The notes beneath the pieces were generated by a model. That model had not been told where the DNA came from, did no database searches, and worked only from the letters and a program-made list of their open reading frames with translations. A program made the translations under genes and the position numbers. Shown here in pieces: positions 3 through 12,228 of a stretch of 12,228 nucleotides of DNA (within the stretch, counting starts at the first letter, position 1; every line of letters starts with the position of its first letter). The stretch covers positions 1 to 12,228 of the forward strand of contig CDMY01000900.1 in the NCBI GenBank assembly GCA_001179505.1. The letters are read 5' to 3'. Source of the stretch: Vitrella brassicaformis CCMP3155. Its lineage: Eukaryota; Protista; Chromerida.

Positions 3-452
3 GCGACGATCCGGATGGCTCATCCGCTGGTGCTGGGCGCTCTCAAGACCAGCATCGGGCACCTGGAGGGGTCGGCAGGCATCTCGGGGCTCATCAAGCT
101 CATCCTCACTCTCCTGCACGGCGTCGCCCCGCCCAACCTGCACCTGAATCAGCTCAACCCCCACATCGACACGGACGGCTTCAACGTCCTCATCCCCACA
201 CAACCCGTCAAGCTCCTCAGGGCCAACAGGCAGCAGCATGGACAAGGCCAGAGCAGTAAAGACTCGTCATCGCCGACATCCTCATTGCCGAAGGAGTCAT
301 CGCCGAAAGAGAAATCGCCGAAGGAGTCATCCCCGACGTCGTCAGTGCCGACATCGTCAGCGACATCGTCAGTGACGACAGGCATGCCGGTCCTGGTGGG
401 CGGCGTCAGTTCCTTCGGCTTCGGCGGCGCCAACGCCCACGCCCTCATCCAG
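3..452 (+). other. Ketosynthase domain, C-terminal part
   Basis: GALKTSIGHLEGSAGISG (second catalytic His at 60-62), PPNLHLNQLNPHI and GVSSFGFGGANAH. The catalytic Cys and first His would lie upstream of the window. Confidence 0.92.
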
Positions 453-3400
453 TGCCACCCCATCAGCCAGTCGTCGACAACAACGGTGCAGGAGCTGCTC
501 GAGACGGGAGGTTTGTCAGCGGCGGCCCGGCAGTCTGAGAAGCGGAAGGTGGCGCTCATGTTCACGGGTCAGGGCAGCCAGTACGTCAACATGGGACGGG
601 AGCTGTACGAGAGCGATCAGGTGTTCCGCGAGGCGATTGGCCAGTGCGCGTCGGTGCTCGATCCGTATCTGTCGGCGCAGCACGAGGGCATCTCACTGGT
701 GGGGCTGCTGTACCCCGACTCGAGTGGTGAAGCTGACGAGATGGCGCGGCTCATCGACGAGACGCGCTTCTCTCAGCCCGTGCTGTTTGCTGTCGAGTAC
801 GCCCTGTACGCGTCGCTGTCTGCGCGTGGAGTGGTGGCGGATGTGGTCATGGGACACAGCCTGGGCGAGTACGTCGCGGCGACCGTGGCTGGGGTCATGT
901 CGCTGCCCGACGGGCTGCGTCTGATCGCGGAGCGGGCGCGCATCATGCACGCGAGCGATCCCAAGGATGGCGTCATGGCGGCCTGCCGACTGAGCCCTGA
1001 GCAAGTCGACGAGGCCATACAGGCGCTGCCAGCAGCATCGAGGAACGTGTCGCTGGCGGCGGTCAACGGCCCCAAGAGCGTCGTGGTGTCGGGTGCTCGC
1101 GAGCAAGTGGAGGAGGTCTTCAAGAGCCTACATGTCGGCAACCGATACAAGCTGCTGCCGGTGTCCCACGCCTTCCACTCGCCCCTCATGGCCGACACCG
1201 TCGACCACTTCAGGCAAGTCCTGCAGACCGTCGCCCTCCGTCCACCCACCATCCCCCTCGTCTCAAACGTCACCGGACACCTCGTCACACCTGACCAGCA
1301 ACCTGGCAGCACCACAACAGACTTGACCGACGTCGACTACTGGGCCCACCACATCACCCTGCCGGTCCGCTTCCTCGACGGCATCCAGACCACCATACAG
1401 CAGGCCGGCGCAAGAGTTCTCATCGAGGTCGGACCCAAACCCACGTTGATCAACATGGGCAAACAGTGCCTCAGGGGCGATGCACAGCCACTCGACCTTC
1501 AGTGGCTACCAACCATCGACCCGAAGACCGACGCGATCGGTTCCATGAAGGATGTTGTCGAGTCCGTCTCGTTCAAGGAGTCCGGCACCCACCAATGGAA
1601 GCATGACTTGTTCCCGTGGGTCGAGGTGGCTCATCCTGTGCTTGGCAAGCGTGAAGTGCTCGAGAAGGGTTCCAACTTCGAGGGTGTCCTGCGGAAGGAG
1701 GTGCGTGCGCTCATTTCAGAGCACATTGTCCTTGGAGCCGCCTTGATGCCCGGTGCTGGCTTCCTCGAAGCCATGAGTTCGGCTGGTGCGGCCGCAATGG
1801 AGCCTCCTCTTGGCCAGAGCCTTGATTTGTCCGGCAAGAAGAGGAGTGCTTACGATCTCGTGTGTCTTGAAGAGGTCATGTTCGAGAAGCCCTTGCGGCT
1901 CCTCAAGGCAAGATCTGGTGGGTCTGAGGAAGCCAAGGAACAGACGGTCCGCATCACAGTCAGTGGTGAGGAGGTGTCCAACCTGACTCACTGCTGCGCT
2001 CCACCGATGGCAATCGAGTTCCTCTCAAGAGCAGAGGGCGAGGATGACTTCTCGGCTCACGGGTCTGCTCGGCTCACGGCGTTTGCTCCACCAGACGAGG
2101 CGGTCACCAGTTCAGTGGAGGAGGTCGGCACAGTCAAGGAGCGGTGTCCTCACACCGCCGACATCTCATCCTTCTACTCGCAACTCAAGGCCCTGGGACT
2201 TCAGTACCAAGGGCGCTTCCAGACAGTCCAGGACATCGCAGTGGGAGACGACGAAGCCATCTCACGCCTCAAGCTGCCAGCCACCGCCGCCTTCGAGAGG
2301 GGCTTCCGCTTCCATCCGGCCCTTCTAGATGGAGCATTCCAAACAACTGCCGGCATCTTGGCGGCAATTGAGCCCAAGGACAGCGTTCGAACCAAGTCGA
2401 AGACTGTTCTCGTACCCGTGGGTGCGGAGCGGGTCTGTCTTGCGAAGCTTGATTCATCGCAGGAGGTGTGGAGTCACGTGAAGCTGGTTCAGAAGGACGA
2501 CAACGGCGTGCTCATCGACGTCACAATCCAGGACAGGCTCGGACGGCCAGTGGCTGTCTTGAACAAGTTGAGTCTGCGTCAGATGGAGACTACAGCCCCT
2601 GCAGAGATTCCCAGGGATCTTCTGTGGGAGACATCATGGAAGCAACAGGCCCTCCCTGCTGAGGAGGAAGACAAGACACACGAGCCCAAGCTGCAGGCAG
2701 CCCCCGATCTTGAAGAGGAGACCACCCACAGGACAAAGTCGAATTGCCTCGTCTTCGGTGCCGCCGGTGACTGGCAGCAAGCTACAGAGAGCTTCCTGTC
2801 AGCGACTGCGTCGCTTGGAGAGACGCGGGTCATCTGCCACGGTGACATGCCGTCGGCAGCCGACCTCGACAAGCTCTTGTCAGACAAGGAAGGAGACAAG
2901 CTGCTATGGGACAGCATCATCTACCTTGGAGGACTGATGGTCGACTCGCGGCCTCTCGAGGACAGCGAGATCGTGCTTGACGTCATGGGTGAGGTCCTAG
3001 AGCTGACGCAATCCCTTCTTCGTCTAGGAAGGACGATGGAGCTTCCAGCCGTGTGGCTCGCCACAGCAGGCAGTCAGAACTGTGAGACCAGCGGCCATGA
3101 CGAAGCAGGTATGAATGAAAATGTCATCCCCATTGCTCACAAACTTATCATGTACGTCTTCGCCGTGTGATCTTATATGTCTGTTATGCAGGAGACCTTC
3201 TGGCTCGTCACGCCATGCATGGTGGCTTGTGGGGCTTCGCAAAGGTGGCACGATTGGAGTCAGAGAACGGCCTCGGACAAATGATCCGCATGAGCTGCGT
3301 CGACCTGGATCGACGCACAGCGGACGCGGAGTCATTGCTGCAGCAGCTGCTCTGGGCAATCGACCGTGAGTGGCCCAAGGAGGCAAAGGACTATGAGCCA

Positions 3401-6400
3401 GAGATCGCAGTGCGCAACAACCACGCCGAGTCGCCGGGAGCTTACAAGCTCTACTACTCCCGAATGGTCAAGTCGTCTCTACAAGCCAGAGGACACTGTG
3501 AGCTGCAGCTAGGCAAGCGCGGCACCCTTTCCAGCCTGAGAGTGCGGCCAGTCTCCAACGATGGTCGCGAGTCTCCGGGTGCTGGCTGCGTGGAGGTGCG
3601 TGTGCGTGCGGTTGGTTTGAATTTCCGTGACGTGTTGAACGTGATGGGTCTGTATCCTGGTGACCCGGGTCCGCCTGGCGGCGATTGCTCGGGGACGGTC
3701 GTGAGTGTTGGAGCGGGTGTGACGCATCTGAGTGTGGGCGATGATGTGTACGGTGTTGCACCCGGGTGTCTGCGGACGTATGTGGCCACGGATGCCCACT
3801 TGATGGCCATCAAGCCGGTGACCATGTCGTTCGAGCAAGCCGCGGCGCTGCCAGTCGTCTTCGTCACGGTCCAAGTGGCCTTCAGGGAGCTCGCCAAGGT
3901 CACAAAGGGCGACAAGGTGCTCGTGCACGTGGCGACGGGAGGGGTGGGCTTGGCCNNNNNNNNNNNNNNNNNNNNNNNNNNNNNNNNNNNNNNNNNNNNN
4001 NNNNNNNNNNNNNNNNNNNNNNNNNNNNNNNNNNNNNNNNNNNNNNNNNNNNNNNNNNNNNNNNNNNNNNNNNNNNNNNNNNNNNNNNNNNNNNNNNNNN
4101 NNNNNNNNNNNNNNNNNNNNNNNNNNNNNNNNNNNNNNNNNNNNNNNNNNNNNNNNNNNNNNNNNNNNNNNNNNNNNNNNNNNNNNNNNNNNNNNNNNNN
4201 NNNNNNNNNNNNNNNNNNNNNNNNNNNNNNNNNNNNNNNNNNNNNNNNNNNNNNNCTCCGGTGGGCTTGGCCGCTCTGCAGTACTGCCAGCAAGTGGGAG
4301 CGACCGTGTTTGCGACGGCCGGCAGTGAGGCGAAACGGGACTACCTGCGCCAGACGTGTGGCGTCCAGTACGTGACCACATCGCGTGACGCCAAGCAGTT
4401 CAAGGAGGACATGCTGTCGTTCCTGGGGGGCGCCAGTAGTGGCAAGATCGATGTGGTCCTCAACTCGTTGATCGACGACTACATTCCCTTCTCTCTTGAC
4501 CTCATGGCACCCAACGGCCGCTTCATGGAGCTCGGCAAGCGCGAGACCTGGACCAAGGACAAGGTCGCCGAAAAGAGACCCGACGTCATGTACGAGCTCA
4601 TCGCCATAGATCGGTTCATTGAGGAGAACCCCTTGAGGGTCGAGAGCATCCTGAAGGACATGTCCGCCGGATTCGCTGCCGGGAGGCTGCCGCCTCTGCC
4701 AATGCACGTCTTCGACATGACCAGTCAAGACCAGCATTTGGGCGGTGTTGCAGGCTTCCGGTTCCTGCAGCGGGCGCAACACATCGGCAAGGTCGTCCTG
4801 AGGGTGCCGAACGCCCTTCAATCTGTCGACACCGTCTTGGCGTCGTCACAGAGCAGCGGTAGCTATGTCATCACGGGCGGCTCTGGCGGCATCGGCCTCT
4901 TGCTGGCCGAGTGGCTGGTGCACGAGGGAGCCAAACACATCGTGTTGGTGTCGAGACGCGGCAAGCCGTCCGCTGCCGTGGCTGCCACGGAGCTTTGGCA
5001 ACGCCTCACGGCAGCGTCCAACACATCCTTCAAGGTCCACTGCCTTGCGGCTGATGTGTCCAAGAAGGACGACTGCGAGAGGCTCTTCCAGCAACTGGCC
5101 GAGAGCATCCCTGATGCGCCTGTCAAGGGCATCTTCCACGCCGCTGGTGTGCTGGAAGACGCAACGCTCAACAACCAGACAAAGGACAACATCACCAAAG
5201 TCTACCTGCCAAAGGTGAGACCGAGAGAGTGGGCGGCGGACCTTCTAAGAAGGGGACTTCACTTCTTGTTTGTGCTTTTCTTCAGGTCATGGGAGCCTGG
5301 TATCTTCACGAGTTATCTCAGACATGGCCTCTGCCTCTTGACCACTTCATGATGTTCTCGTCGGTGGCGTCCATGCTGGGCAACTTCGGCCAAAGCAACT
5401 ACGCTGCAGCCAATGCGTGCCTCGACGCACTGACAGTCCATCGACGCTCGAGGGGATTTGCCGCACAGAGCATTCAATGGGGCCCCTGGGTGGAGCAAGG
5501 CATGGCAGCCAAGCTCCGCCAGCATTTGGACAAGGTCGGCATCAAGGGCATCTCCAACGAGCTCGGACTCCGCGTCATGGGCGACGTCATGAGCCACCAG
5601 CTGTCGACGCCCGCCAGGCCAGGAGTGGGTGTCATCGGTTGCCAGGCCCTCAACTGGCCTGTCTTCCTAGGGCGTCACGAGAGGGTTCCGAACCTTTTCG
5701 CTGACATCCCCATGGCATCTACAGCAGCCTCTGAAGGCAAGGGCAGCCTCGATCTGAGCAGAATGAGCAGAGACGAGCTGGGAGACATCCTGTGCTCACT
5801 CGCTGAGGAGGTGGCGGGATCGGGCGAGAGGCCGGAGCCCGACGCGCCTTTGATGGAGCTCGGGTTCGACTCGCTCGGCGCCGTCGAGTTCCGCAACGCT
5901 ATCGCAGACATGACGGGCGTCAAGCTGCCGCAGTCACTGGTCTTCGAGAATCCCAGCATCAACGACCTCGCCGACTTCATTCTCAGCAGAGCACCGACCA
6001 AGGGCAAGGACGAGCCGTCAGCTGATTCTGCTGAGGGAGTGGACGGGAGCAAGGCCAACGCCGAGGCGATCGCCAGCGGCACCACCAAGCCGTTCGACAT
6101 CATGTCACTGACGGTGGAGAAGTGGCTGCGGTTCACCTTCTCTGAGAACAAGCGCTACTTCCAGTACGTCGACGCCTTCGAGAACAAGTACCCGTCAGTC
6201 GACGCCATGTCCAAGGAGAGTGACGTCCACGGAGCGATAAGGTCCCTCAACGTCAAGAACGCGGAGGATACGCAGCTGATCGCAGCCGCGTGGGAGAAGC
6301 TCATCAGCGCTGACACCGCCGAGGCCAAGCCTGGCAGGAGGCAGAAGACCCCAGACGTGTACGACGACATGAAGATGTTGTCCGACTGGCTCGACACCGA

Positions 6401-9400
6401 GATTGCAGTCCGCATCAAGTCAGCTCTCCCTCGTGTGCCCCAGAGACGGGTCCGCCGCGTTCTGTTGACGGGCGTGACGGGCTTTGTCGGTCGCTGCCAA
6501 CTGGTGACATTGCTCGAGAGGGAGACGCCTGGGAAGCTCGTCGTGTGCTGTCTTGTGCGCGCCTCAAGCGTCGAGCACGGCCTCCAGCGAGTCCGTCAGG
6601 CCTGCACTGAGGCGAGGATATGGCGGGAGGAATTTGCTCACAGGATTGAGGTGCTGCCGGGAGACTTCACGCTTGAGGACTTTGGACTGGGAGAGAAGAA
6701 ATTCCAGGAGCTGTGCCGCTCAGTCGACATGGTAAGGAGGAAGAGGCAATCAAAGCAGACAGGCAAGACGATCACCTTCTGTTGTTCTGTCCTCAGGTGT
6801 ACCACACCGGTGCCGATGTGAATCTGATGAACAACTACGCCAAGCTGCGTCACACCAACACTCTCGCCATGAAGGGCGTCATCCGCGTCTGCGCCACACA
6901 CAGACTCAAGGAGCTCCACCACACGTCCACCCTGGGCGTATTCCCGGTGAGTGTAACGAATGCATGGAAGCATGCAGCATACACACATACAGTGAGTGCT
7001 TGTACACAATCGATTGGGATGTATGTGTGCTTGGATGTGTGTGTATATGTTTAATTAGGCCTTCTACGCGGCCTTCGGTCAGGAGTTCAGCGACATGAGC
7101 CCCATCATGGAGGGTGTGTCGCCCGACGAGAAGGAGATGAAGAAGTTCTTCCCTCCGACAGCCATCGGGTACCCCTGGAGCAAGTGGGCCACCGAGCAGA
7201 CACTCCGCAAGGCGCGCGACCTGGGCCTCCCCCTTTGCATCTATCGGCTGCCCAACACTAACCTGAGTCTGCGGACGGGCTTCACCAACCGCACCGACTA
7301 CCTCACGGCCCTTATGGTGTCCTCCATGCAAGAGGGCATGTTCCCTATCGGAGCCACCGCTGCGCCCTTCACACCCGCAGGTCAGACGACCTCACAAGGC
7401 AGTAGTTAGGCTAACGACTACAGATTCTCTTACTCTCTTGTGCGGCTTTTGTTGTGCGCAGACACCATATCTGAGATGCTGGTTGAGGCGTCCTTCCTTG
7501 AGAATCGCAAGCACTGGTTCTACCACCTGGTCGATGCGACCATCGTCACAAGGTACTTACTACTCGCACACAGCGTTCAGCTGGTACGACACTAGATACT
7601 ACATCTTGTCCCTCCCCCACTGTGCGTGCAGGCACGAGCTGGAGCGGTGGTCAGCTGACATGGGCGTGAGCTATCGCGGTGTCCATGTCCAAGAGTTCCT
7701 CAACGCTGTCAAGGAGAGAGGCCGAGTTTCTCCCGTCCATCGGTTCGTCCCACTCATGCAGGTGAGAATGGAACAACGAACCGTCCATGGAGGTAGGGGA
7801 TCCATCTCGTTGGTTGGTATCCCATTCCTTTAGCATTGGCGTCGGTATTGGTTTGACTCTGAGGAGCGGACCGAGCCGCTGCCAATCAGCAACAGACACA
7901 TCTTCGAGGACCTGCCCACCTTCAAATGGCCCAGTGGACGCGACGTCTTCCAGGCATCCTTTATGGTCAGTGAGGGAACGATGGAGGGAGAAACACCACA
8001 CCAGCTCGCACAAGTCAAACTGACCGGCTCGTTGTGCTCTTTGGCATCGTGTCTTCAGTACTCTTGCGAGTCTCGTTTCTTCATGCCCAACTCCAAGTCG
8101 ATCGGCATGGTTGCCGATGACATGGTGTCCCTGGCCAAGAAGAACGCCGGCCTCGCCACACTGCCGCAAGGGCTGCCTGGCGGGGATGCCTTCTTCACCC
8201 AGCCCATCCGGTCCCTCACAGAGAGCGCCAGACACGACGTCAAGCTGAGCTTCTTCGGACAGTTTGCCCTCTCCCGCACCGTCCACCAGCTGCTTAAGAA
8301 CGCCCTCTTCCTCCAGGCCATGGAGCAGCAGCACCCGGACATACTCCGCCAGTCCATCTCACAACCGCTCGTCATCGTGGGGCCGGATGTGCTCGGCAAC
8401 GCCTTCCTGCAGCTGCTCATGGCCCAGGACCCATCGAATCGCGTGCCGCGCTTCTGCGAAGTCAACTTCCCGTACGGCGAGGATGGATCATTCAGACCGA
8501 AGCGACTGCCCAATAACGCCCCATGGGAACAGGTGCGTACACCTGCACACCAGGGAACAGTGTTGCCTGGACCGATCCATGATGTGTGTATGTGTCTTGG
8601 TTTGCTCCTTCCTTCCTTGGCGCAGGACCCTCGCATGGCAGCCGCTCGGCGGCTGCTCGAGTCCTCTCCCATGCTGGGCAATGACTACATGTCCATCCTC
8701 CCCCGCAGTGGCGACATGCCCGAGGATGACACGGCCATATTCGAGCACTCACTCCGCGCGCACACCTTCTGCATGGGCTACGGCGCGCCGTCGTACGGCC
8801 AGTGGCTGAGGGAGTCTGATGGAGCGGAGATCAAGAAGGGCTACGCAATGCACAAGAGATTCCTCCAGCACCTGCAGTGGCAGCGGGCAGGCGACCGGTG
8901 GGTGCTCAAGATGCCCGCACACATGCTGGCTCTTGACGCGCTCTTCGAGACCTACCCCGATGCCAGGGTCATCTTCCTCCACAGGTGTGTGAGAATGGAC
9001 AACACACATACTGACACATGGGCTCTGTGGCATCCCTCTCACCGGTATACCTCTTCCTTTGCTTTTTTGTTTGTCATCAATTCATTCATTCAGAAACCCC
9101 AAGGTTGCCCTCGGGCCAGTGTGCAGGATCGTCAACTCTGTGCGCGAGAAGCTCATGGACGATGCTGACATGAGCGTCACAAGCCACCAGCAGGCGGAGC
9201 TCATGGCCGAGATGGTCAACACAGCCACAGAGTTCCGCCAAAACAATCCCGCGCTGAGGGGCCGGTTTGTCGACGTCACGACCGACGCGCTCGTCCGCGA
9301 TCCCGTGGGCACCGTGAGGAAGATCTACCGGCAGTGCGGGCTGGCCATGCCTCGGCGGGCGTCTCAGTCCATGTGGGACTTGGTCAGCCAGCACCGCGAC

Positions 9401-9706
9401 AAGCGAGACCAGCTCTTCAGGCAGCACGAGCCGCTCGACCAGTTCGGCCTCGACGAGGACGACCTGGACGAGGCCTTCCAGCCCTACTACTCTGAGACAA
9501 GGCAGATCCAGACGCAGCGCCGCTTCTCGCGCCTGATGCCCACATGCGGCGGTGGCAACACAATCGCGCGGAGGACATCCAGCCAAAGCGGGCGATGGCG
9601 GCGGCTGTCACTGCCACAGTCGCTGTCAGTCATGGCCACACGCCGTAGCGAATCGTATACCGTAAGCATCCGCCGTAGCGAATCGCAGAGACAGGACAGC
9701 AAGTAG
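3..9706 (+). CDS. 5'-partial multi-exon modular type I polyketide/fatty acid synthase, terminal module. Proposed join: <3..3108, 3192..3955, 4273..5214, 5286..6731, 6797..6946, 7059..7380, 7462..7552, 7632..7761, 7834..7965, 8059..8532, 8626..8984, 9094..9706 (8529 nt, ~2842 aa + stop)
   Basis: PKS domain motifs occur in canonical order across ORFs in all three + frames. Every frame change is explained by a GT-AG intron with consistent phase, or by the overlap at the N gap. The frame is open from base 3 (GCG ACG ATC CGG ATG), so ATG15 is internal. Confidence 0.93.
261..377 (+). repeat. Coding degenerate 15-nt tandem repeat (~8 units; DSSSP TSSLP KESSP KEKSP KESSP TSSVP TSSA TSSVT) inside KS
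   Basis: The first six units end in CCG at 275, 290, 305, 320, 335 and 350. Confidence 0.85.
546..1527 (+). other. cis-acyltransferase domain, malonyl-CoA-type
   Basis: MFTGQGSQY, QPVLF, GHSLG (Ser 858-860), HAFH (1167-1178) and LIEVGP. HAFH is the established malonyl-specificity motif. Confidence 0.92.
1632..2580 (+). other. Dehydratase domain
   Basis: HPVLG, HIVLGAALMP (HxxxGxxxxP, His 1722-1724), GLQYQGRFQ and HPALLDGAFQ (Asp 2328-2330). Confidence 0.9.
2620..3470 (+). other. Structural pseudo-KR subdomain (spans intron 1)
   Basis: Lies between DH and ER. Contains LLWETSW, VWLATAGSQ, GLWGFAKVARLE, CVDLD and EPEIAVR, which resemble psiKR signatures. Confidence 0.75.
3109..3191 (+). other. 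Intron 1 (83 nt, phase 1)
   Basis: GTATGA...ATGCAG; joins HDEAG to DLLARHA and removes the stop at 3168-3170. Confidence 0.88.
3490..4810 (+). other. Enoylreductase domain (interrupted by N gap)
   Basis: EVRVRAVGLNFRDVL..MGLYPG, VLVHVATGGVGLA|ALQYC, VFATAGS, DVVLNSL, GRFMELGK and HIGKVVL. Confidence 0.92.
3956..4255. other. Assembly gap 1 (300 N), probably spurious
   Basis: GGTGGGCTTGGCC is present at both 3943-3955 and 4260-4272, and the protein is contiguous across the gap. Confidence 0.85.
4861..5600 (+). other. Ketoreductase domain (spans intron 2)
   Basis: YVITGGSGGIG Rossmann motif, HAAGVLED (LDD-like, B-type-like), PK|V catalytic Lys, FSSVAS and GQSNYAAAN (catalytic Tyr/Asn). Confidence 0.92.
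5215..5285 (+). other. Intron 2 (71 nt, phase 0)
   Basis: GTGAGA...TTTTCTTCAG; restores the KR segment YLPK|VMGAWYLHE. Confidence 0.92.
5770..5990 (+). other. Acyl carrier protein domain
   Basis: LMELGFDSLGAVEFRN..LP.SLVFENPS; phosphopantetheinylation Ser at 5871-5873. Confidence 0.93.
6102..6308 (+). other. Putative SAM (sterile alpha motif)-like helical domain in the ACP-R linker
   Basis: By eye, TVEKWL...YFQYVDAFENK..SVDAM....IRSLNVKNAEDTQLIAAAWEKL follows the SAM pattern V..WL....Y...F.e.......L...LGi...g.r.kil.a...L. No HMM was run. Confidence 0.45.
6732..6796 (+). other. Intron 3 (65 nt, phase 0)
   Basis: GTAAGG...TCCTCAG; restores SVDM|VYHTGADVN. Confidence 0.92.
6947..7058 (+). other. 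Intron 4 (112 nt, phase 0)
   Basis: GTGAGT...TTAATTAG with GT-repeat-rich interior; joins GVFP|AFYAAF. Confidence 0.85.
7381..7461 (+). other. Intron 5 (81 nt, phase 1)
   Basis: GTCAGA...GTGCGCAG; removes the in-frame TAG at 7407-7409 and joins FTPA|DTISEML. Confidence 0.85.
7553..7631 (+). other. Intron 6 (79 nt, phase 2)
   Basis: GTACTT...GCGTGCAG; joins TIVT-R|HELERW. Confidence 0.8.
7762..7833 (+). other. Intron 7 (72 nt, phase 0)
   Basis: GTGAGA...TCCTTTAG; the terminal TAG is an in-frame stop if retained. Joins PLMQ|HWRRYWF. Confidence 0.85.
7966..8058 (+). other. Intron 8 (93 nt, phase 0, stop-free in frame)
   Basis: GTCAGT...TGTCTTCAG. Inferred from splice signals and composition only, because the frame stays open through it. 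Confidence 0.7.
8533..8625 (+). other. Intron 9 (93 nt, phase 0, stop-free in frame)
   Basis: GTGCGT...GTGTATGTGTCTTGGTTTGCTCCTTCCTTCCTTGGCGCAG; removal gives PWEQ|DPR, matching ST-family spacing. Confidence 0.78.
8985..9093 (+). other. Intron 10 (109 nt, phase 2)
   Basis: GTGTGT...TTCATTCAG; restores IFLH-R|NP, the HRDP-like motif. Confidence 0.88.
9641..9685 (+). repeat. 15-nt perfect direct repeat CGCCGTAGCGAATCG x2 (RRSES), 30-nt period
   Basis: Copies at 9641-9655 and 9671-9685. Confidence 0.9.
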
Positions 9707-9790
9707 AGCCCCAGTGAACGGTGAATGGATGTAGTGTTGGAGTGCATGCATGTCTTGTAGTGAATGTATGGGCGTCTGTGTGTGTGTGGG

Positions 9791-10090
9791 NNNNNNNNNN
9801 NNNNNNNNNNNNNNNNNNNNNNNNNNNNNNNNNNNNNNNNNNNNNNNNNNNNNNNNNNNNNNNNNNNNNNNNNNNNNNNNNNNNNNNNNNNNNNNNNNNN
9901 NNNNNNNNNNNNNNNNNNNNNNNNNNNNNNNNNNNNNNNNNNNNNNNNNNNNNNNNNNNNNNNNNNNNNNNNNNNNNNNNNNNNNNNNNNNNNNNNNNNN
10001 NNNNNNNNNNNNNNNNNNNNNNNNNNNNNNNNNNNNNNNNNNNNNNNNNNNNNNNNNNNNNNNNNNNNNNNNNNNNNNNNNNNNNNNNNN
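9791..10090. other. Assembly gap 2 (300 N)
   Basis: Run of N next to a GT-repeat; I saw no flank overlap. Confidence 0.98.
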
Positions 10091-10260
10091 TGAGAACGTT
10101 AATCTGAGCCTGTGAGCTTTGTGAGTGTGTGTAGTGTATGTCAGTCATGTCGTAGTAAAGTGCACCGACCGCACCTGCAGAAGAAAGAGGGACGGCCTGC
10201 CTGCCTGCCTGAGTTTTGAGAATCATAGTCTGTCTGCCTGTCTCATACATACTCTCTCTG

Positions 10261-10263
<3 letters not shown>

Positions 10264-10293
<30 letters not shown>
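10264..10293. repeat. (TGTC)n microsatellite
   Basis: Direct reading; a degenerate related tract lies at ~10587-10622. Confidence 0.95.
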
Positions 10294-10828
10294 CGAGTGT
10301 CATTGTCCAAAGTCAATCAAAACCCTGTTTTTTATTGTCCACACAACACACACTGGCCACCACTGAACGAATGGATCCCATCCATCTTCCCGGAGTGAGT
10401 GCATTGATTGCCGACTGGCAGTATGCACGGCACACTCTCATCCCTGTCCATCACCCACCCCCTCCTTGAGTCATTTTTCGTACCTTACTACCTCTCTGTC
10501 TTGTGTGATGAAGATCGATCGCAGCTGAGCCAGCCAGCGCTCCGTTGCACGCTGAGCGTCTGTCGGTGTGTATGGCGTGTGCGGTGTCTGCCTGTCCGTC
10601 TGCCTGTCTGTCTGTCTGTCTGGCTGTGGGGTGCATGAGTGATCCATCGATTGAATGCGGGAGACGAGCGCTTCAGTGAAGTGACTGACCTTGAGGCAAT
10701 AGCTCTTCCCCTGCTGCAGTGAAGTAAGCACGCGATGTGTGCAGTCGATGGATGACAGATGGATGACGATGAAGCCAACAGGGCTTCGGACAGTTTTGCG
10801 GTCTTGACTGTACTGTTTGGTGCACTGC

Positions 10829-10866
10829 TCTCTCTCCCTCTCCCTCCCTCTCTCCCTCCCTCCCTC
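10829..10866. repeat. (CT)n/(CCCT)n polypyrimidine microsatellite
   Basis: Direct reading. Confidence 0.9.
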
Positions 10867-11460
10867 CCGGTCTCTCGCTCTCTTTATTCGTATGTGTGTC
10901 TGTCTGTGTGTGATGTGGTGGCGCTATGGTGTCCGGCGGCTGTGGGTCGACCGCATCGAGGATTGTGATGATGCAACCCCCGCGAGCCATGCATGCGTGT
11001 CTGTCTTGTGTGCGTGTGTGTGGCTTTCTTCATCCTTCTTCGTGCTGTTCGCCAGTGCGTTCTCCTTTTTGCCGGATCGTTCCTCTTTTTGCCCTTTTTT
11101 TGTAAGAAAACCTCTTTCTGACGTGCCTCCCCCTGATAGCTCGGTGCCGCTCGCGATCCGTCCAGACATAGATACCATTGCCGGGTCGATGCGAGCCAAT
11201 CACATACGGCGCCTGTCTAGTCTTAAGTGCGTGTGGTGTGTCTGTGCCTCGTTCCCCCCATTGTGTATACTCGTCTCGTGAGTGTTTTGTTTGGGAGGTG
11301 GGACTAGAGGGGGGCGGGGCCATCTGATGATAATCGAACGAGGGAGGCAACTCTGACGGACTCGGGCTGGATCGATCGAATCTTAATGCTATCATTTTTC
11401 TTTCATGCATGCAACTTTGGGTGTCTGCATCACCCACTGCCTGCATCACGAATATCGCTC

Positions 11461-11544
11461 CCTGCCTGTCTGTCTGGCTGGCTGGCTGGCTGGCTGGCTG
11501 TCCGTCTGTGCGTGTGTGTGCGTGTGTGTGCGCGTGTGTGTGTA
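11461..11544. repeat. Compound microsatellite (CTGT)-(CTGG)n-(GT)n
   Basis: Direct reading. Confidence 0.93.
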
Positions 11545-12050
11545 TGGCTTTATATGACACCCATGATAGTCGACTGACTTGTAAGGGTGAGGATGACTGA
11601 AACTAGTGTGCGTGGACAGACAAACATCGTGTGTGCTGTGCCGCTTTGTGCCTTTGTCGATGGTCCATAGGACTCACTCAACGACTTACGGATTGCACAC
11701 CTTCAACATTACCGGAAAAGTCGAGAGACAACGCACATCACCTGTCCTCTCCGTTACGAGCCATGCATGATTACTTGACGTGTGTACAGAGTTCGAAGAG
11801 GTATTCAAGAAGGTCAAGCCGCTGGAGACACTGTGGAAGTCTTATATTCCTCCGGCGAGGCGATGCGCTCGTCGTCCACCCACACGATCTTCGAAGCCTC
11901 GCTCATGCCGAAACACTTGGGGCATCAGCAGTAGCTCGGGGTAGCGAGTAGGAAATTACTAGGAATGTAACGAAGCCAAAGAATTATTCAGTGACGATAG
12001 AGTGGCGAGATCTCCACAAGTTGGGATGCACGCAGCACATCTAATATAGA

Positions 12051-12119
12051 AAACCGTAACAAACCCTAGCGAAACCCTGGACGAGGCTCGCCCAGGCTCG
12101 CCCTACAGGCTCGCCCTAC
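12051..12119. promoter_or_regulatory. Cluster of telomere-like AAACCCT motifs and three AGGCTCGCCC copies; function putative
   Basis: AAACCGT 12051, AAACCCT 12061 and 12072; AGGCTCGCCC at 12084, 12094 and 12107. The repeats are seen; a regulatory role is inferred. Confidence 0.35.
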
Positions 12120-12155
12120 GATCGCTGCCTGCCGCAGTAGAGAATGAACAAGGAA

Positions 12156-12173
12156 GGAGGAGGAGGAGGAGGA
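12156..12173. repeat. (GGA)6 trinucleotide repeat
   Basis: Direct reading. Confidence 0.9.
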
Positions 12174-12228
12174 GAAGGGACGTAGGGAGAGCGTTGGTGC
12201 TTGTTGCGGAGCCTTGGGGCAGGTGGGT

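What the first reader, a model, noticed from the sequence alone, without database searches (positions are those of the whole stretch)
8365..9135. The sulfotransferase domain has lost both PAPS-binding motifs: a likely pseudo-enzyme or repurposed domain
Seen: the 5'-PSB position reads PLVIVGPDVLGNAFLQLLM (8365-8421). Family members typically have P.FIVG.PR[ST]GTT.LH.LL, so the Arg and Ser/Thr phosphate-binding residues are replaced by D-V-L-G-N-A. The 3'-PB position reads HRNPKVALGPVCRI where HRDP....S.CS is expected, so Arg is kept but the Ser is missing. Surrounding scaffold motifs (DP.NR, WVLKMPAH, YPDARVIF, DPVGTV..IY) are well preserved and the frame is intact. Inference: the fold is maintained but PAPS chemistry may be gone, leaving a possible lipid-product binding, scaffolding or novel catalytic role.
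Basis: partly seen in the sequence, partly recalled or inferred. Interest (0 to 1): 0.7.

Follow-up and report, generated by a model that had tools for sequence, protein, structure and literature searches.

The report
Likely dead sulfotransferase domain on algal PKS
The last domain of a giant lipid-building enzyme of the alga Vitrella brassicaformis has a sulfotransferase fold but has lost most residues that normally hold and use the sulfate donor, yet it is expressed and strongly conserved, so it is probably a retained 'pseudo-enzyme' domain, not a decaying one.

Summary
The window is a whole 12.2-kb scaffold of Vitrella brassicaformis. It carries the 3' part of a type I PKS/FAS gene: KS-AT-DH-ER-KR-ACP-thioester reductase-sulfotransferase.

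- **Gene structure:** the ST domain is split by two introns (8533-8625 and 8985-9093). Both are confirmed by spliced contigs in RNA-like runs.
- **Lost residues:** among 269 relatives, the 5'-PSB Arg is R in 261 and Val only here. The two Thr are N and A only here. The 3'-PB Ser is Pro only in this gene.
- **Kept residues:** 42 of 50 highly conserved columns, including the counterparts of TPST Glu99, Lys158 and Arg183. The AF2 model is confident (pLDDT 94.6) and matches mycobacterial STF9/STF1.
- **Selection:** a second, about 91% identical, expressed copy exists. Around the loop dN/dS is 0.06, or 0.015 outside the loop. Three of the four amino-acid changes fall in the loop (GNA versus STT).
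- **Relatives:** seven other fused ST domains (four of them named Vitrella or Chromera genes) also have degenerate loops and may form one clade. Vitrella CEL94036 and the apicomplexan termini are intact.

Best reading: a retained, catalytically disabled ST domain in a known R-ST release module (SwfB/coccidian FAS type, described in 2013). Loss of activity has not been tested. This scan has already noted R-ST tails on two other pieces of this genome, one also with donor-binding losses.

The parts
15..3170 (+). KS C-terminal end, AT and DH domains of the PKS. The gene is cut by the scaffold's 5' end.
   Evidence: Pfam Ketoacyl-synt_C, Acyl_transf_1 and PS-DH. GHSLG and HxxxGxxxxP are present in P0270.
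3581..5492 (+). ER (ADH_N / ADH_zinc_N) and KR domains, interrupted by intron(s).
   Evidence: Pfam hits in ORFs 3167-4375, 3766-5352 and 5229-6821.
5787..5981 (+). ACP (PP-binding), GFDSLG.
   Evidence: Pfam PF00550. Motif found.
6465..7352 (+). Thioester reductase domain (NAD_binding_4), in several exons. TGVTGFVG and YPWSK are intact.
   Evidence: Pfam PF07993 in two ORFs. Motifs. Splice joints.
8059..8532 (+). ST-domain exon A: N-terminal helices, the 5'-PSB strand-loop-helix and the Glu128 counterpart (8458-8460).
   Evidence: The intron at 7966-8058 and the exon end at 8532 come from the RNA joints and P0270. This exon gets no Pfam hit.
8380..8403 (+). Degenerate 5'-PSB loop, G-P-D-V-L-G-N-A. 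The family consensus is G-L-[PN]-R-[ST]-G-T-T.
   Evidence: The second copy reads S-T-T at 8395-8403.
8533..8625 (+). Intron 1 (93 nt, in frame, no stop).
   Evidence: GT..AG joint in X7, X9 and X6. An intron sits at the same position in L001.
8626..8984 (+). ST-domain exon B. It includes H177L (8698-8700), E186D (8725-8727), the kept Lys247 (8908-8910) and His251 (8920-8922), and the start of the 3'-PB motif (His-Arg).
   Evidence: Pfam Sulfotransfer_3, E 5.8e-8. Column analysis.
8985..9093 (+). Intron 2 (109 nt), lying inside the Arg codon of the 3'-PB motif.
   Evidence: GT..AG joint. L001 has an intron at the same position and phase.
9094..9706 (+). ST-domain exon C. It holds the rest of the 3'-PB motif (NPKVALGP, with Pro at 9116-9118 in place of Ser), the C-terminal helices, a low-complexity tail and the stop codon.
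   Evidence: Pfam Sulfotransfer_3, E 1.9e-7. Also.

Best explanation
The domain is a catalytically disabled sulfotransferase-fold domain (a 'pseudo-ST'). It sits at the C-terminus of a Vitrella type I PKS/FAS whose release module is reductase plus sulfotransferase.

- **In intact relatives:** the reductase would release the ACP-bound acyl chain as an aldehyde or alcohol, and the ST would sulfate it with PAPS. This is inferred, following the proposal made for SwfB.
- **In this copy:** the Stf/TPST-type fold and most scaffold residues are kept. The PSB-loop Arg, which aligns with the TPST Arg that contacts the 5'-phosphate, is Val. Both loop Thr are gone, and the 3'-PB Ser is Pro. A strongly conserved His (position 177) is Leu.
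- **Predicted consequence (inferred):** the domain no longer carries out PAPS-dependent sulfotransfer. The enzyme would release an unsulfated reduced product. The domain would be retained for a non-catalytic role in the R-ST module, such as structural support or product binding.
- **Shown versus inferred:** sequence, splicing, expression, fold prediction, family statistics and the selection pattern are shown here. Loss of activity and the retained role are inferred.
For: **Substitutions at conserved sites**
- Across 269 relatives, the changes at the PSB Arg and both PSB Thr are unique to this gene. Pro at the 3'-PB Ser is seen only in its products.
- Six of the eight lost conserved columns lie in the two PAPS motifs.
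- The profile-to-PDB alignment maps these positions onto the TPST PSB Arg, Lys158 and Arg183/Ser191. Ala mutants of the TPST Arg, Glu and Lys substantially reduce activity (PMC10951654).

**The domain is maintained**
- AF2 pLDDT is 94.6, with top matches STF9 and STF1.
- The gene is spliced and expressed, and the upstream catalytic motifs are intact.
- Against the second copy, dN/dS is 0.064 over 52 codons and 0.015 without the loop. The loop alone has 3 nonsynonymous and 1 synonymous change.

**The same pattern in relatives**
- Seven other fused ST domains, four of them named Vitrella or Chromera genes, have degenerate loops and have lost His177, and most have also lost Ser280 or Lys247.
- A tree holding all eight degenerate sequences together is not rejected (AU p 0.65). 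It scores 6.7 lnL units better than the free search.
Against: - There is no binding or activity measurement.
- The loop length, both Gly, the Glu128/Lys247/His251/Arg272 counterparts and the C-terminal region are kept. PAP(S) could therefore still bind through backbone amides and the 3'-PB Arg.
- The dN/dS estimate rests on 52 codons. It was built from a variant table that may be incomplete, and the phasing of the second copy across unitigs is unknown.
- The AF2 model borrows its fold from an alignment dominated by intact homologues.
- The single clade of degenerate sequences was named after the tree had been seen. It could also reflect attraction between fast-evolving sequences.
Confidence: 0.6

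Rival explanations
1. The domain is still a working PAPS-dependent sulfotransferase with a non-canonical donor site. The backbone amides of the kept-length loop, together with Lys247, His251, Arg272 and C-terminal basic residues, would be enough.
For: The loop length and both Gly are kept, as are the Glu, Lys, His and Arg counterparts. Purifying selection around the loop is strong. The second copy still reads S-T-T in the loop.
Against: The Arg is R in 261 of 269 relatives, and both copies lack it. The aligned TPST Arg contacts the 5'-phosphate, and its Ala mutant loses most activity (PMC10951654). The loss of Ser280 and His177 in the same domain points to relaxation of the whole active site.
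Confidence: 0.15
2. The ST fold has taken on a new function. It would bind another ligand or catalyse PAPS-independent chemistry on the reductase product. The loop differences between the two copies would then reflect adaptive change.
For: Three adjacent nonsynonymous changes lie in the loop against an otherwise almost unchanged flank. Degenerate ST domains have been retained in several chromerid PKS genes.
Against: No new conserved motif replaces the lost one. The degenerate loops differ from each other (GPDVLGNA, GFDRVSVT, GLDRISTT, GVARVAGQ, GHPRAAGS), which looks like relaxation rather than a new site. Three codons are too few to show positive selection.
Confidence: 0.15
3. The domain is simply decaying. 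It would be a recently inactivated, functionless appendage that has not yet been broken.
For: Intact paralogues and orthologue-like genes exist (CEL94036, L001, gregarines). The branch leading to this domain is long (0.70 against 0.46 for CEL94036).
Against: The frame is open across three exons, and the gene is correctly spliced and expressed. With dS about 0.55 to the second copy, dN/dS is only 0.015 outside the loop. The domain keeps 42 of 50 conserved columns.
Confidence: 0.07

Closest known systems
Mycobacterial Stf-type sulfotransferases STF1 (PDB 2zq5) and STF9 (PDB 2z6v), Pfam Sulfotransfer_3
   Same: Closest solved structures by sequence profile (E 4e-95 and 5e-86) and by fold (TM 0.75-0.86). 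The overall architecture matches, including the N-terminal helical extension.
   Different: STF1 and STF9 have the canonical loop (GLVRTGTT, GMPRTGTT) and the conserved His. STF9 also has the full RDP...S 3'-PB motif, and STF1 keeps its Arg and Ser. The window domain lacks the loop Arg, both loop Thr, the 3'-PB Ser and that His. It is also fused to a PKS rather than free-standing.
SwfB (R+ST) of sponge-symbiont swf clusters and the R-ST C-termini of coccidian type I FAS (PMC3908369)
   Same: The domain set is the same: KS-AT-DH-ER-KR-ACP followed by thioester reductase and sulfotransferase. The window gene is the fused form. Gregarine, Rhytidocystis, Cardiosporidium and Chromera proteins share the tail.
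   Different: The product proposed for SwfB is an alkyl sulfate. In this copy the ST has lost its donor-site residues, so sulfation is not expected. No member of this group has been characterised biochemically.
CurM / olefin synthase ST domains (PDB 4gbm, 4gox)
   Same: These are also sulfotransferase domains embedded in a PKS off-loading module. They are distant homologues (profile E about 1e-5; Foldseek E 6e-5 to 2e-4).
   Different: Their context is ACP-ST-TE. They sulfate a beta-hydroxyl to create a leaving group and have intact PAPS sites. Here the context is ACP-R-ST, there is no TE, and the subfamily (Stf-like) is different.
Tyrosylprotein sulfotransferases TPST1/2 (PDB 5wri, 3ap1)
   Same: Same Pfam clan. 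The profile alignment maps R105, K247, R272 and S280 onto the TPST PSB Arg (Arg78 in TPST2), Lys158 and Arg183/Ser191.
   Different: The TPSTs are active enzymes with all of these residues. The window domain has Val and Pro at two of them, and it carries a large insertion (about residues 130-240) that the TPSTs lack.

Membership tests
Sulfotransfer_3 / Stf-like sulfotransferase fold family (homology) | Significant sequence or profile match | tested here: met
   Pfam PF13469 hits exons B and C (E 5.8e-8 and 1.9e-7). phmmer hits 2z6v and 2zq5. There are 2,955 relatives at E<=1e-3.
Sulfotransfer_3 / Stf-like sulfotransferase fold family (homology) | Sulfotransferase alpha/beta fold with a strand-loop-helix at the PSB position | tested here: met
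   AF2 pLDDT 94.6. Strand 98-101, loop, helix 105-115. Foldseek STF9 TM 0.80/0.86. The model depends on an alignment of intact homologues.
Active PAPS-dependent sulfotransferase | 5'-PSB loop with the catalytic Arg/Lys and Ser/Thr residues (G-x-x-R-[ST]-G-[TS]-[TS]) | tested here: not met
   The loop reads GPDVLGNA. Arg to Val, Thr to Asn and Thr to Ala are each unique among 269 relatives.
Active PAPS-dependent sulfotransferase | 3'-PB motif: Arg, and Ser eight residues later | tested here: inconclusive
   The Arg is kept. The Ser is Pro, where 246 of 269 relatives have S. The motif is therefore half present.
Active PAPS-dependent sulfotransferase | Counterparts of TPST Glu99 and Lys158 | tested here: met
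   Lys247 is present by alignment. Glu128 is present; its equivalence to TPST Glu99 rests on its spacing after the PSB Arg, since the profile alignment to TPST stops short of it. The Glu column is E/Q variable in this family, so its catalytic role here is uncertain.
Active PAPS-dependent sulfotransferase | PAPS binding and sulfate transfer | not testable with these tools
   Needs protein biochemistry.
R-ST release module of swf / apicomplexan type I FAS-PKS | ACP followed by a thioester reductase and then a contiguous ST domain at the C-terminus | tested here: met
   Pfam domain order. P0270 model. Same tail in L001, Gregarina, Cardiosporidium, Rhytidocystis and Chromera. Described in PMC3908369.
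R-ST release module of swf / apicomplexan type I FAS-PKS | Reductase with an NAD(P)-binding Gly motif and YxxxK | tested here: met
   TGVTGFVG at residue 1977 and YPWSK at residue 2152 of P0270.
CurM/OLS-type ST-TE off-loading | ST placed between ACP and a C-terminal thioesterase | tested here: not met
   There is no TE. The ST is the terminal domain and follows a reductase. Homology to 4gbm and 4gox is only distant.
Pseudoenzyme (operational criteria) | Homologue of active enzymes that lacks key catalytic or cofactor residues, yet is expressed and under purifying selection | tested here: met
   Residue losses. Spliced contigs in RNA-like runs. dN/dS 0.064, or 0.015 outside the loop, on 52 codons. 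The absence of activity itself is untested.

The most novel reading that the evidence does not exclude
The degenerate ST domains of chromerid PKS genes would form one old clade. Its members would be this gene and its second copy, Vitrella CEL96740 and CEL93275, Chromera Cvel_3734 and Cvel_19857, and three unnamed transcripts. In that clade the sulfotransferase fold would have been repurposed inside the R-ST release module for a new, PAPS-independent job, such as holding or channelling the fatty alcohol or aldehyde product, or a new reaction. It would be a conserved 'psi-ST' comparable to the pseudo-KR and pseudo-MT domains of animal FAS.
Probability: 0.2. Interest if true: 0.7.

Novelty: new variant of a known kind. 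Interest (0 to 1): 0.5.

Why it matters
R-ST termini of apicomplexan and chromerid type I FAS/PKS enzymes, and of sponge-symbiont Swf proteins, have been known since 2013. They have never been characterised biochemically.

This finding shows that, within one genome, an intact ST terminus (CEL94036) sits beside several termini whose donor site has degenerated but which are still expressed and constrained. That gives a natural active/inactive pair for two tests:
- whether these modules make alkyl sulfates;
- what a sulfotransferase fold does in a megasynthase once it no longer binds PAPS.

It also warns against predicting sulfated products from domain annotation alone.

Tried and rejected
**Searches that found nothing**
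- A word-index search with the 87-aa PSB exon piece, meant to fish out protein fragments of the second copy, returned nothing.
- The look-up of encoding contigs found no gene on record for P0003 or P0121. I therefore had no DNA for a full-length dN/dS.

**P0003 dropped as evidence**
- I first took P0003 (UniProt A0A7S1KFH3) as an independent stand-alone paralogue sharing the Pro substitution.
- The loose ends show other paralogues joining the window sequence at a shared 44-nt stretch (8851-8894).
- P0121 and P0271 mix variant blocks.
- These transcriptome proteins are therefore probably mosaic assemblies, and I do not count P0003 as independent evidence.

**Readings rejected**
- 'The true PSB loop lies elsewhere.' phmmer, the family profile and the AF2 strand-loop-helix all place it at 8365-8421.
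- Membership of the CurM-type ST-TE group.

**Other limits**
- Papers on pseudo-sulfotransferases: no paper held the three search terms.
- No coordinates of the model are available to scripts. I could not measure distances from His177 or Glu186 to the donor site.
Exons were searched by reference one at a time. For the spliced product I used the deposited model P0270 and the transcript protein P0121, both returned by the databases.
Full report
**What the window is**

The window has introns and an assembly gap of Ns starting near 9791. Pfam on its long ORFs gives Ketoacyl-synt_C, Acyl_transf_1, PS-DH, ADH_N/ADH_zinc_N, KR, PP-binding, NAD_binding_4 and Sulfotransfer_3, in that order on the + strand. 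It is therefore the 3' part of a type I PKS/FAS with the order KS-AT-DH-ER-KR-ACP-R-ST.

An exact look-up shows a 2,820-aa NCBI protein (P0270) on a contig of 12,228 bp, which is the window's own length. The cluster it belongs to is named Vitrella brassicaformis. A protein of that length, Vbra_483.t1, is listed among 'other KSs' in PMC7464705. The match to that name rests on length alone. That paper never mentions a sulfotransferase.

**Gene structure of the ST domain**

Reading the DNA gives three exon ends and starts:
- an exon ending at 8532;
- a 93-nt in-frame intron (8533-8625);
- an exon at 8626-8984;
- a 109-nt intron (8985-9093) that splits the Arg codon of the 3'-PB motif;
- a last exon at 9094-9706.

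P0270 and the transcript protein P0121 read ..NAPWEQ|DPRMAAA.. and ..IFLHR|NPKVALGPVCRIV.. exactly as that model predicts.

Contigs of three RNA-like runs (X7, X9, X6) carry GT..AG joints at both introns and at 7966-8058. DNA-like run X2 covers the introns. These runs are labelled RNA by guess only, but the spliced joints show that they contain transcripts.

Exons were searched separately by reference. For the spliced product I used P0270 and P0121 as the databases returned them.

**The observation**

Window 8365-8421 reads PLVIVGPDVLGNAFLQLLM. phmmer against PDB aligns this, without gaps, to ..PLIVLGMPRTGTTVISYLL.. of STF9 (2z6v) and to the matching stretch of STF1 (2zq5).

A 69-sequence family profile aligns the same stretch to IFIGGVPRSGTTLMRAML of TPST1. 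It also aligns K..P.H / hRDPlevlaS to KDPFAL / VRDGRASVHS of TPST1. By this alignment:
- position 105 corresponds to the TPST PSB Arg (Arg78 in TPST2);
- position 247 corresponds to Lys158;
- positions 272 and 280 correspond to Arg183 and Ser191.

Position numbers count from P0270 residue 2346.

Across 269 relatives:

| Position | Family | This gene |
|---|---|---|
| PSB Arg | R 261 | V, unique |
| PSB Thr 1 | T/S 253 | N, unique |
| PSB Thr 2 | T/S 258 | A, unique |
| 3'-PB Ser | S 246 | P, seen only in two products carrying this gene's C-terminal part |

Gly102, Gly107, Glu128, Lys247, His251 and Arg272 are kept.

Of 50 columns conserved at 85% or more, the domain keeps 42. The eight it has lost are L103P, R105V, S/T108N, T109A, H177L, E186D, D273N and S280P. 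Six of these eight lie in the two PAPS motifs. The intact Vitrella paralogue CEL94036 keeps 49 of 50.

Pfam's Sulfotransfer_3 model does not hit the PSB exon here. It hits the equivalent exon of a relative from profile position 1.

**Fold**

AlphaFold2 was run on P0270:2346-2765 with the 69-sequence alignment.
- Mean pLDDT is 94.6 and pTM 0.93, with strand 98-101, a loop and helix 105-115 at the PSB position.
- Foldseek's best PDB matches are STF9 (TM 0.80/0.86) and STF1 (0.75/0.85).
- The olefin-synthase ST, the TPSTs and the CurM ST follow far behind.

The model leans on intact homologues. It shows that the sequence is compatible with the fold, not that the pocket works.

**Not a decaying gene**

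The upstream motifs are intact:
- AT: GHSLG
- DH: HxxxGxxxxP
- KR: GGSGGIG
- ACP: GFDSLG
- R: TGVTGFVG and YPWSK

All four runs laid on the window contain, beside contigs identical to it, contigs of similar depth that differ at 21-25 of about 250 bases. These appear in the DNA-like run X2 as well as in the RNA-like runs. A second copy, about 91% identical, therefore exists and is expressed.

For 8335-8490 the table lists 19 differences, 15 synonymous and 4 nonsynonymous. Three of the nonsynonymous changes fall in adjacent loop codons: 8395 G>A, 8399 A>C and 8401 G>A. They turn G-N-A into S-T-T. Both copies have Val at the Arg position.

Nei-Gojobori estimates:

| Codons | dS | dN | dN/dS |
|---|---|---|---|
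| All 52 | 0.546 | 0.035 | 0.064 |
| Without the 8 loop codons | 0.657 | 0.010 | 0.015 |
| Loop alone (3 nonsyn, 1 syn) | 0.167 | 0.197 | about 1.2 |

The chance that 3 of 4 changed codons fall among the 8 loop codons is 0.009.

Caveats:
- The stretch is short.
- The variant table is capped, and six of the contig's 25 differences are not listed.
- Unitigs cannot be phased.

In the neighbouring unitigs, P0121 differs from the window at 6 and 7 residues, where the variant contigs differ at 21 and 23 bases. If P0121 follows the second copy there, the ratio is again low. This is an inference.

**Relatives**

An exhaustive HMMER search found 2,955 relatives. Most are free-standing bacterial Stf-like proteins.

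About two dozen are long eukaryotic proteins with the ST at the C-terminus. Named members come from Gregarina niphandrodes ('putative type I fatty acid synthase'), Gregarina sp., Selenidium, Polyplicarium, Rhytidocystis, Cardiosporidium, Chromera velia and Vitrella.

A Logan contig, L001, carries ACP-R-ST with introns at the same two positions, and the same phase at intron 2. Its GLNRTGTT and RDPKDTLAS motifs are intact, and an alveolate IMCp gene lies next to it.

In the tree:
- The fused eukaryotic STs form one clade (SH-aLRT 100).
- Within it, the window groups with other chromerid sequences, and its nearest relative is the intact CEL94036.

Eight sequences have degenerate loops:
- the window (GPDVLGNA);
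- Vitrella CEL96740 and CEL93275 (GFDR..);
- P0126 and P0128 (GLDR.STT);
- Chromera Cvel_3734 and Cvel_19857;
- P0176.

All eight have also lost His177, and most have lost Ser280 or Lys247. Every fused eukaryotic sequence with an intact loop in the table keeps His177, Glu186, Lys247 and Ser280.

Over the whole family, loop integrity and His177 are associated (odds ratio 42). The rows are not phylogenetically independent, and some intact bacterial members have Tyr, Asn or Gln there.

Holding the eight degenerate sequences together as one clade gives a tree 6.7 lnL units better than the free search, with AU p 0.65. A single old loss is therefore compatible with the data. The group was named after the tree had been seen, and fast-evolving sequences can attract each other.

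Only this gene has lost the Arg as well.

**What is known**

Della Sala et al. 2013 (PMC3908369) described SwfA (KS-AT-DH-ER-KR-ACP) and SwfB (R+ST) of sponge symbionts.
- They proposed an alkyl sulfate as the product. No function has been tested.

For the TPSTs, the PSB Arg contacts the 5'-phosphate. Ala mutants of the Arg, Glu and Lys substantially reduce activity (PMC10951654).

I found no paper on degenerate ST domains in PKS termini.

This scan has noted R-ST tails on two other pieces of this genome. One of those notes also says that the copy has lost donor-holding residues. That agrees with what I see for CEL96740 and CEL93275.

**Reading**

The most likely explanation is a retained but catalytically disabled ST domain in a known kind of release module. 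The reductase looks functional, so I predict reductive release of an unsulfated long-chain product. The ST fold would be kept for a structural or product-handling role.

Rivals are residual activity through a non-canonical site, a new function, and plain decay. Decay fits worst with the selection pattern.

None of this has been tested at the bench. The active/inactive paralogue pair within one genome makes the test straightforward.

Noticed in passing
window 7865-8925 (variant contigs): A second copy of this PKS tail, about 91% identical in DNA, is present at similar depth in the DNA-like run and the RNA-like runs. It is not represented as a separate protein in the databases searched. Its PSB loop reads GPDVLSTTF instead of GPDVLGNAF.
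   Followed up: partly
window 9091-9762 (record 31 of run X9): Only run X9 holds a variant of the last exon, with 58 differences in 672 nt. It matches the C-terminal variant seen in P0271 and P0003 and also keeps Pro at the 3'-PB Ser position. The other three runs show no variant contig there.
   Followed up: no
window 8851-8894 and 9391-9487: These short stretches are shared exactly with other paralogues. Several contigs join and leave the window here, and depth rises about threefold. The UniProt transcriptome proteins A0A7S1KFH3 (P0003), A0A7S1KGP7 (P0121) and A0A7S1KFC6 (P0271) look like mosaics assembled across such stretches.
   Followed up: partly
L001:1-3823 (Logan contig of SRR7685247): An unidentified alveolate carries ACP-R-ST with introns at the same two positions as the window, and the same phase at intron 2. 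[quoted passage not shown] An IMCp-domain gene lies downstream on the other strand.
   Followed up: partly
window 3500-4500: A low-GC stretch (0.44 against about 0.60) lies between the ADH_N and ADH_zinc_N halves of the ER domain. It is probably one or more introns.
   Followed up: no
window 9707-12228: Downstream of the stop codon there is no Pfam-recognisable ORF. The region holds an N gap (about 9791-10090) and several tetranucleotide repeats (TCTG, TGTC, CTCC, CTGG). The gene is cut at the scaffold's 5' end inside the KS domain.
   Followed up: partly
proteins P0145, P0172, P0208 (bacterial-length relatives): A few free-standing Stf-like proteins have also lost the PSB Arg together with the 3'-PB Ser, and two of them the Lys as well. 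Degenerate members therefore occur outside the eukaryotic fusions too.
   Followed up: no
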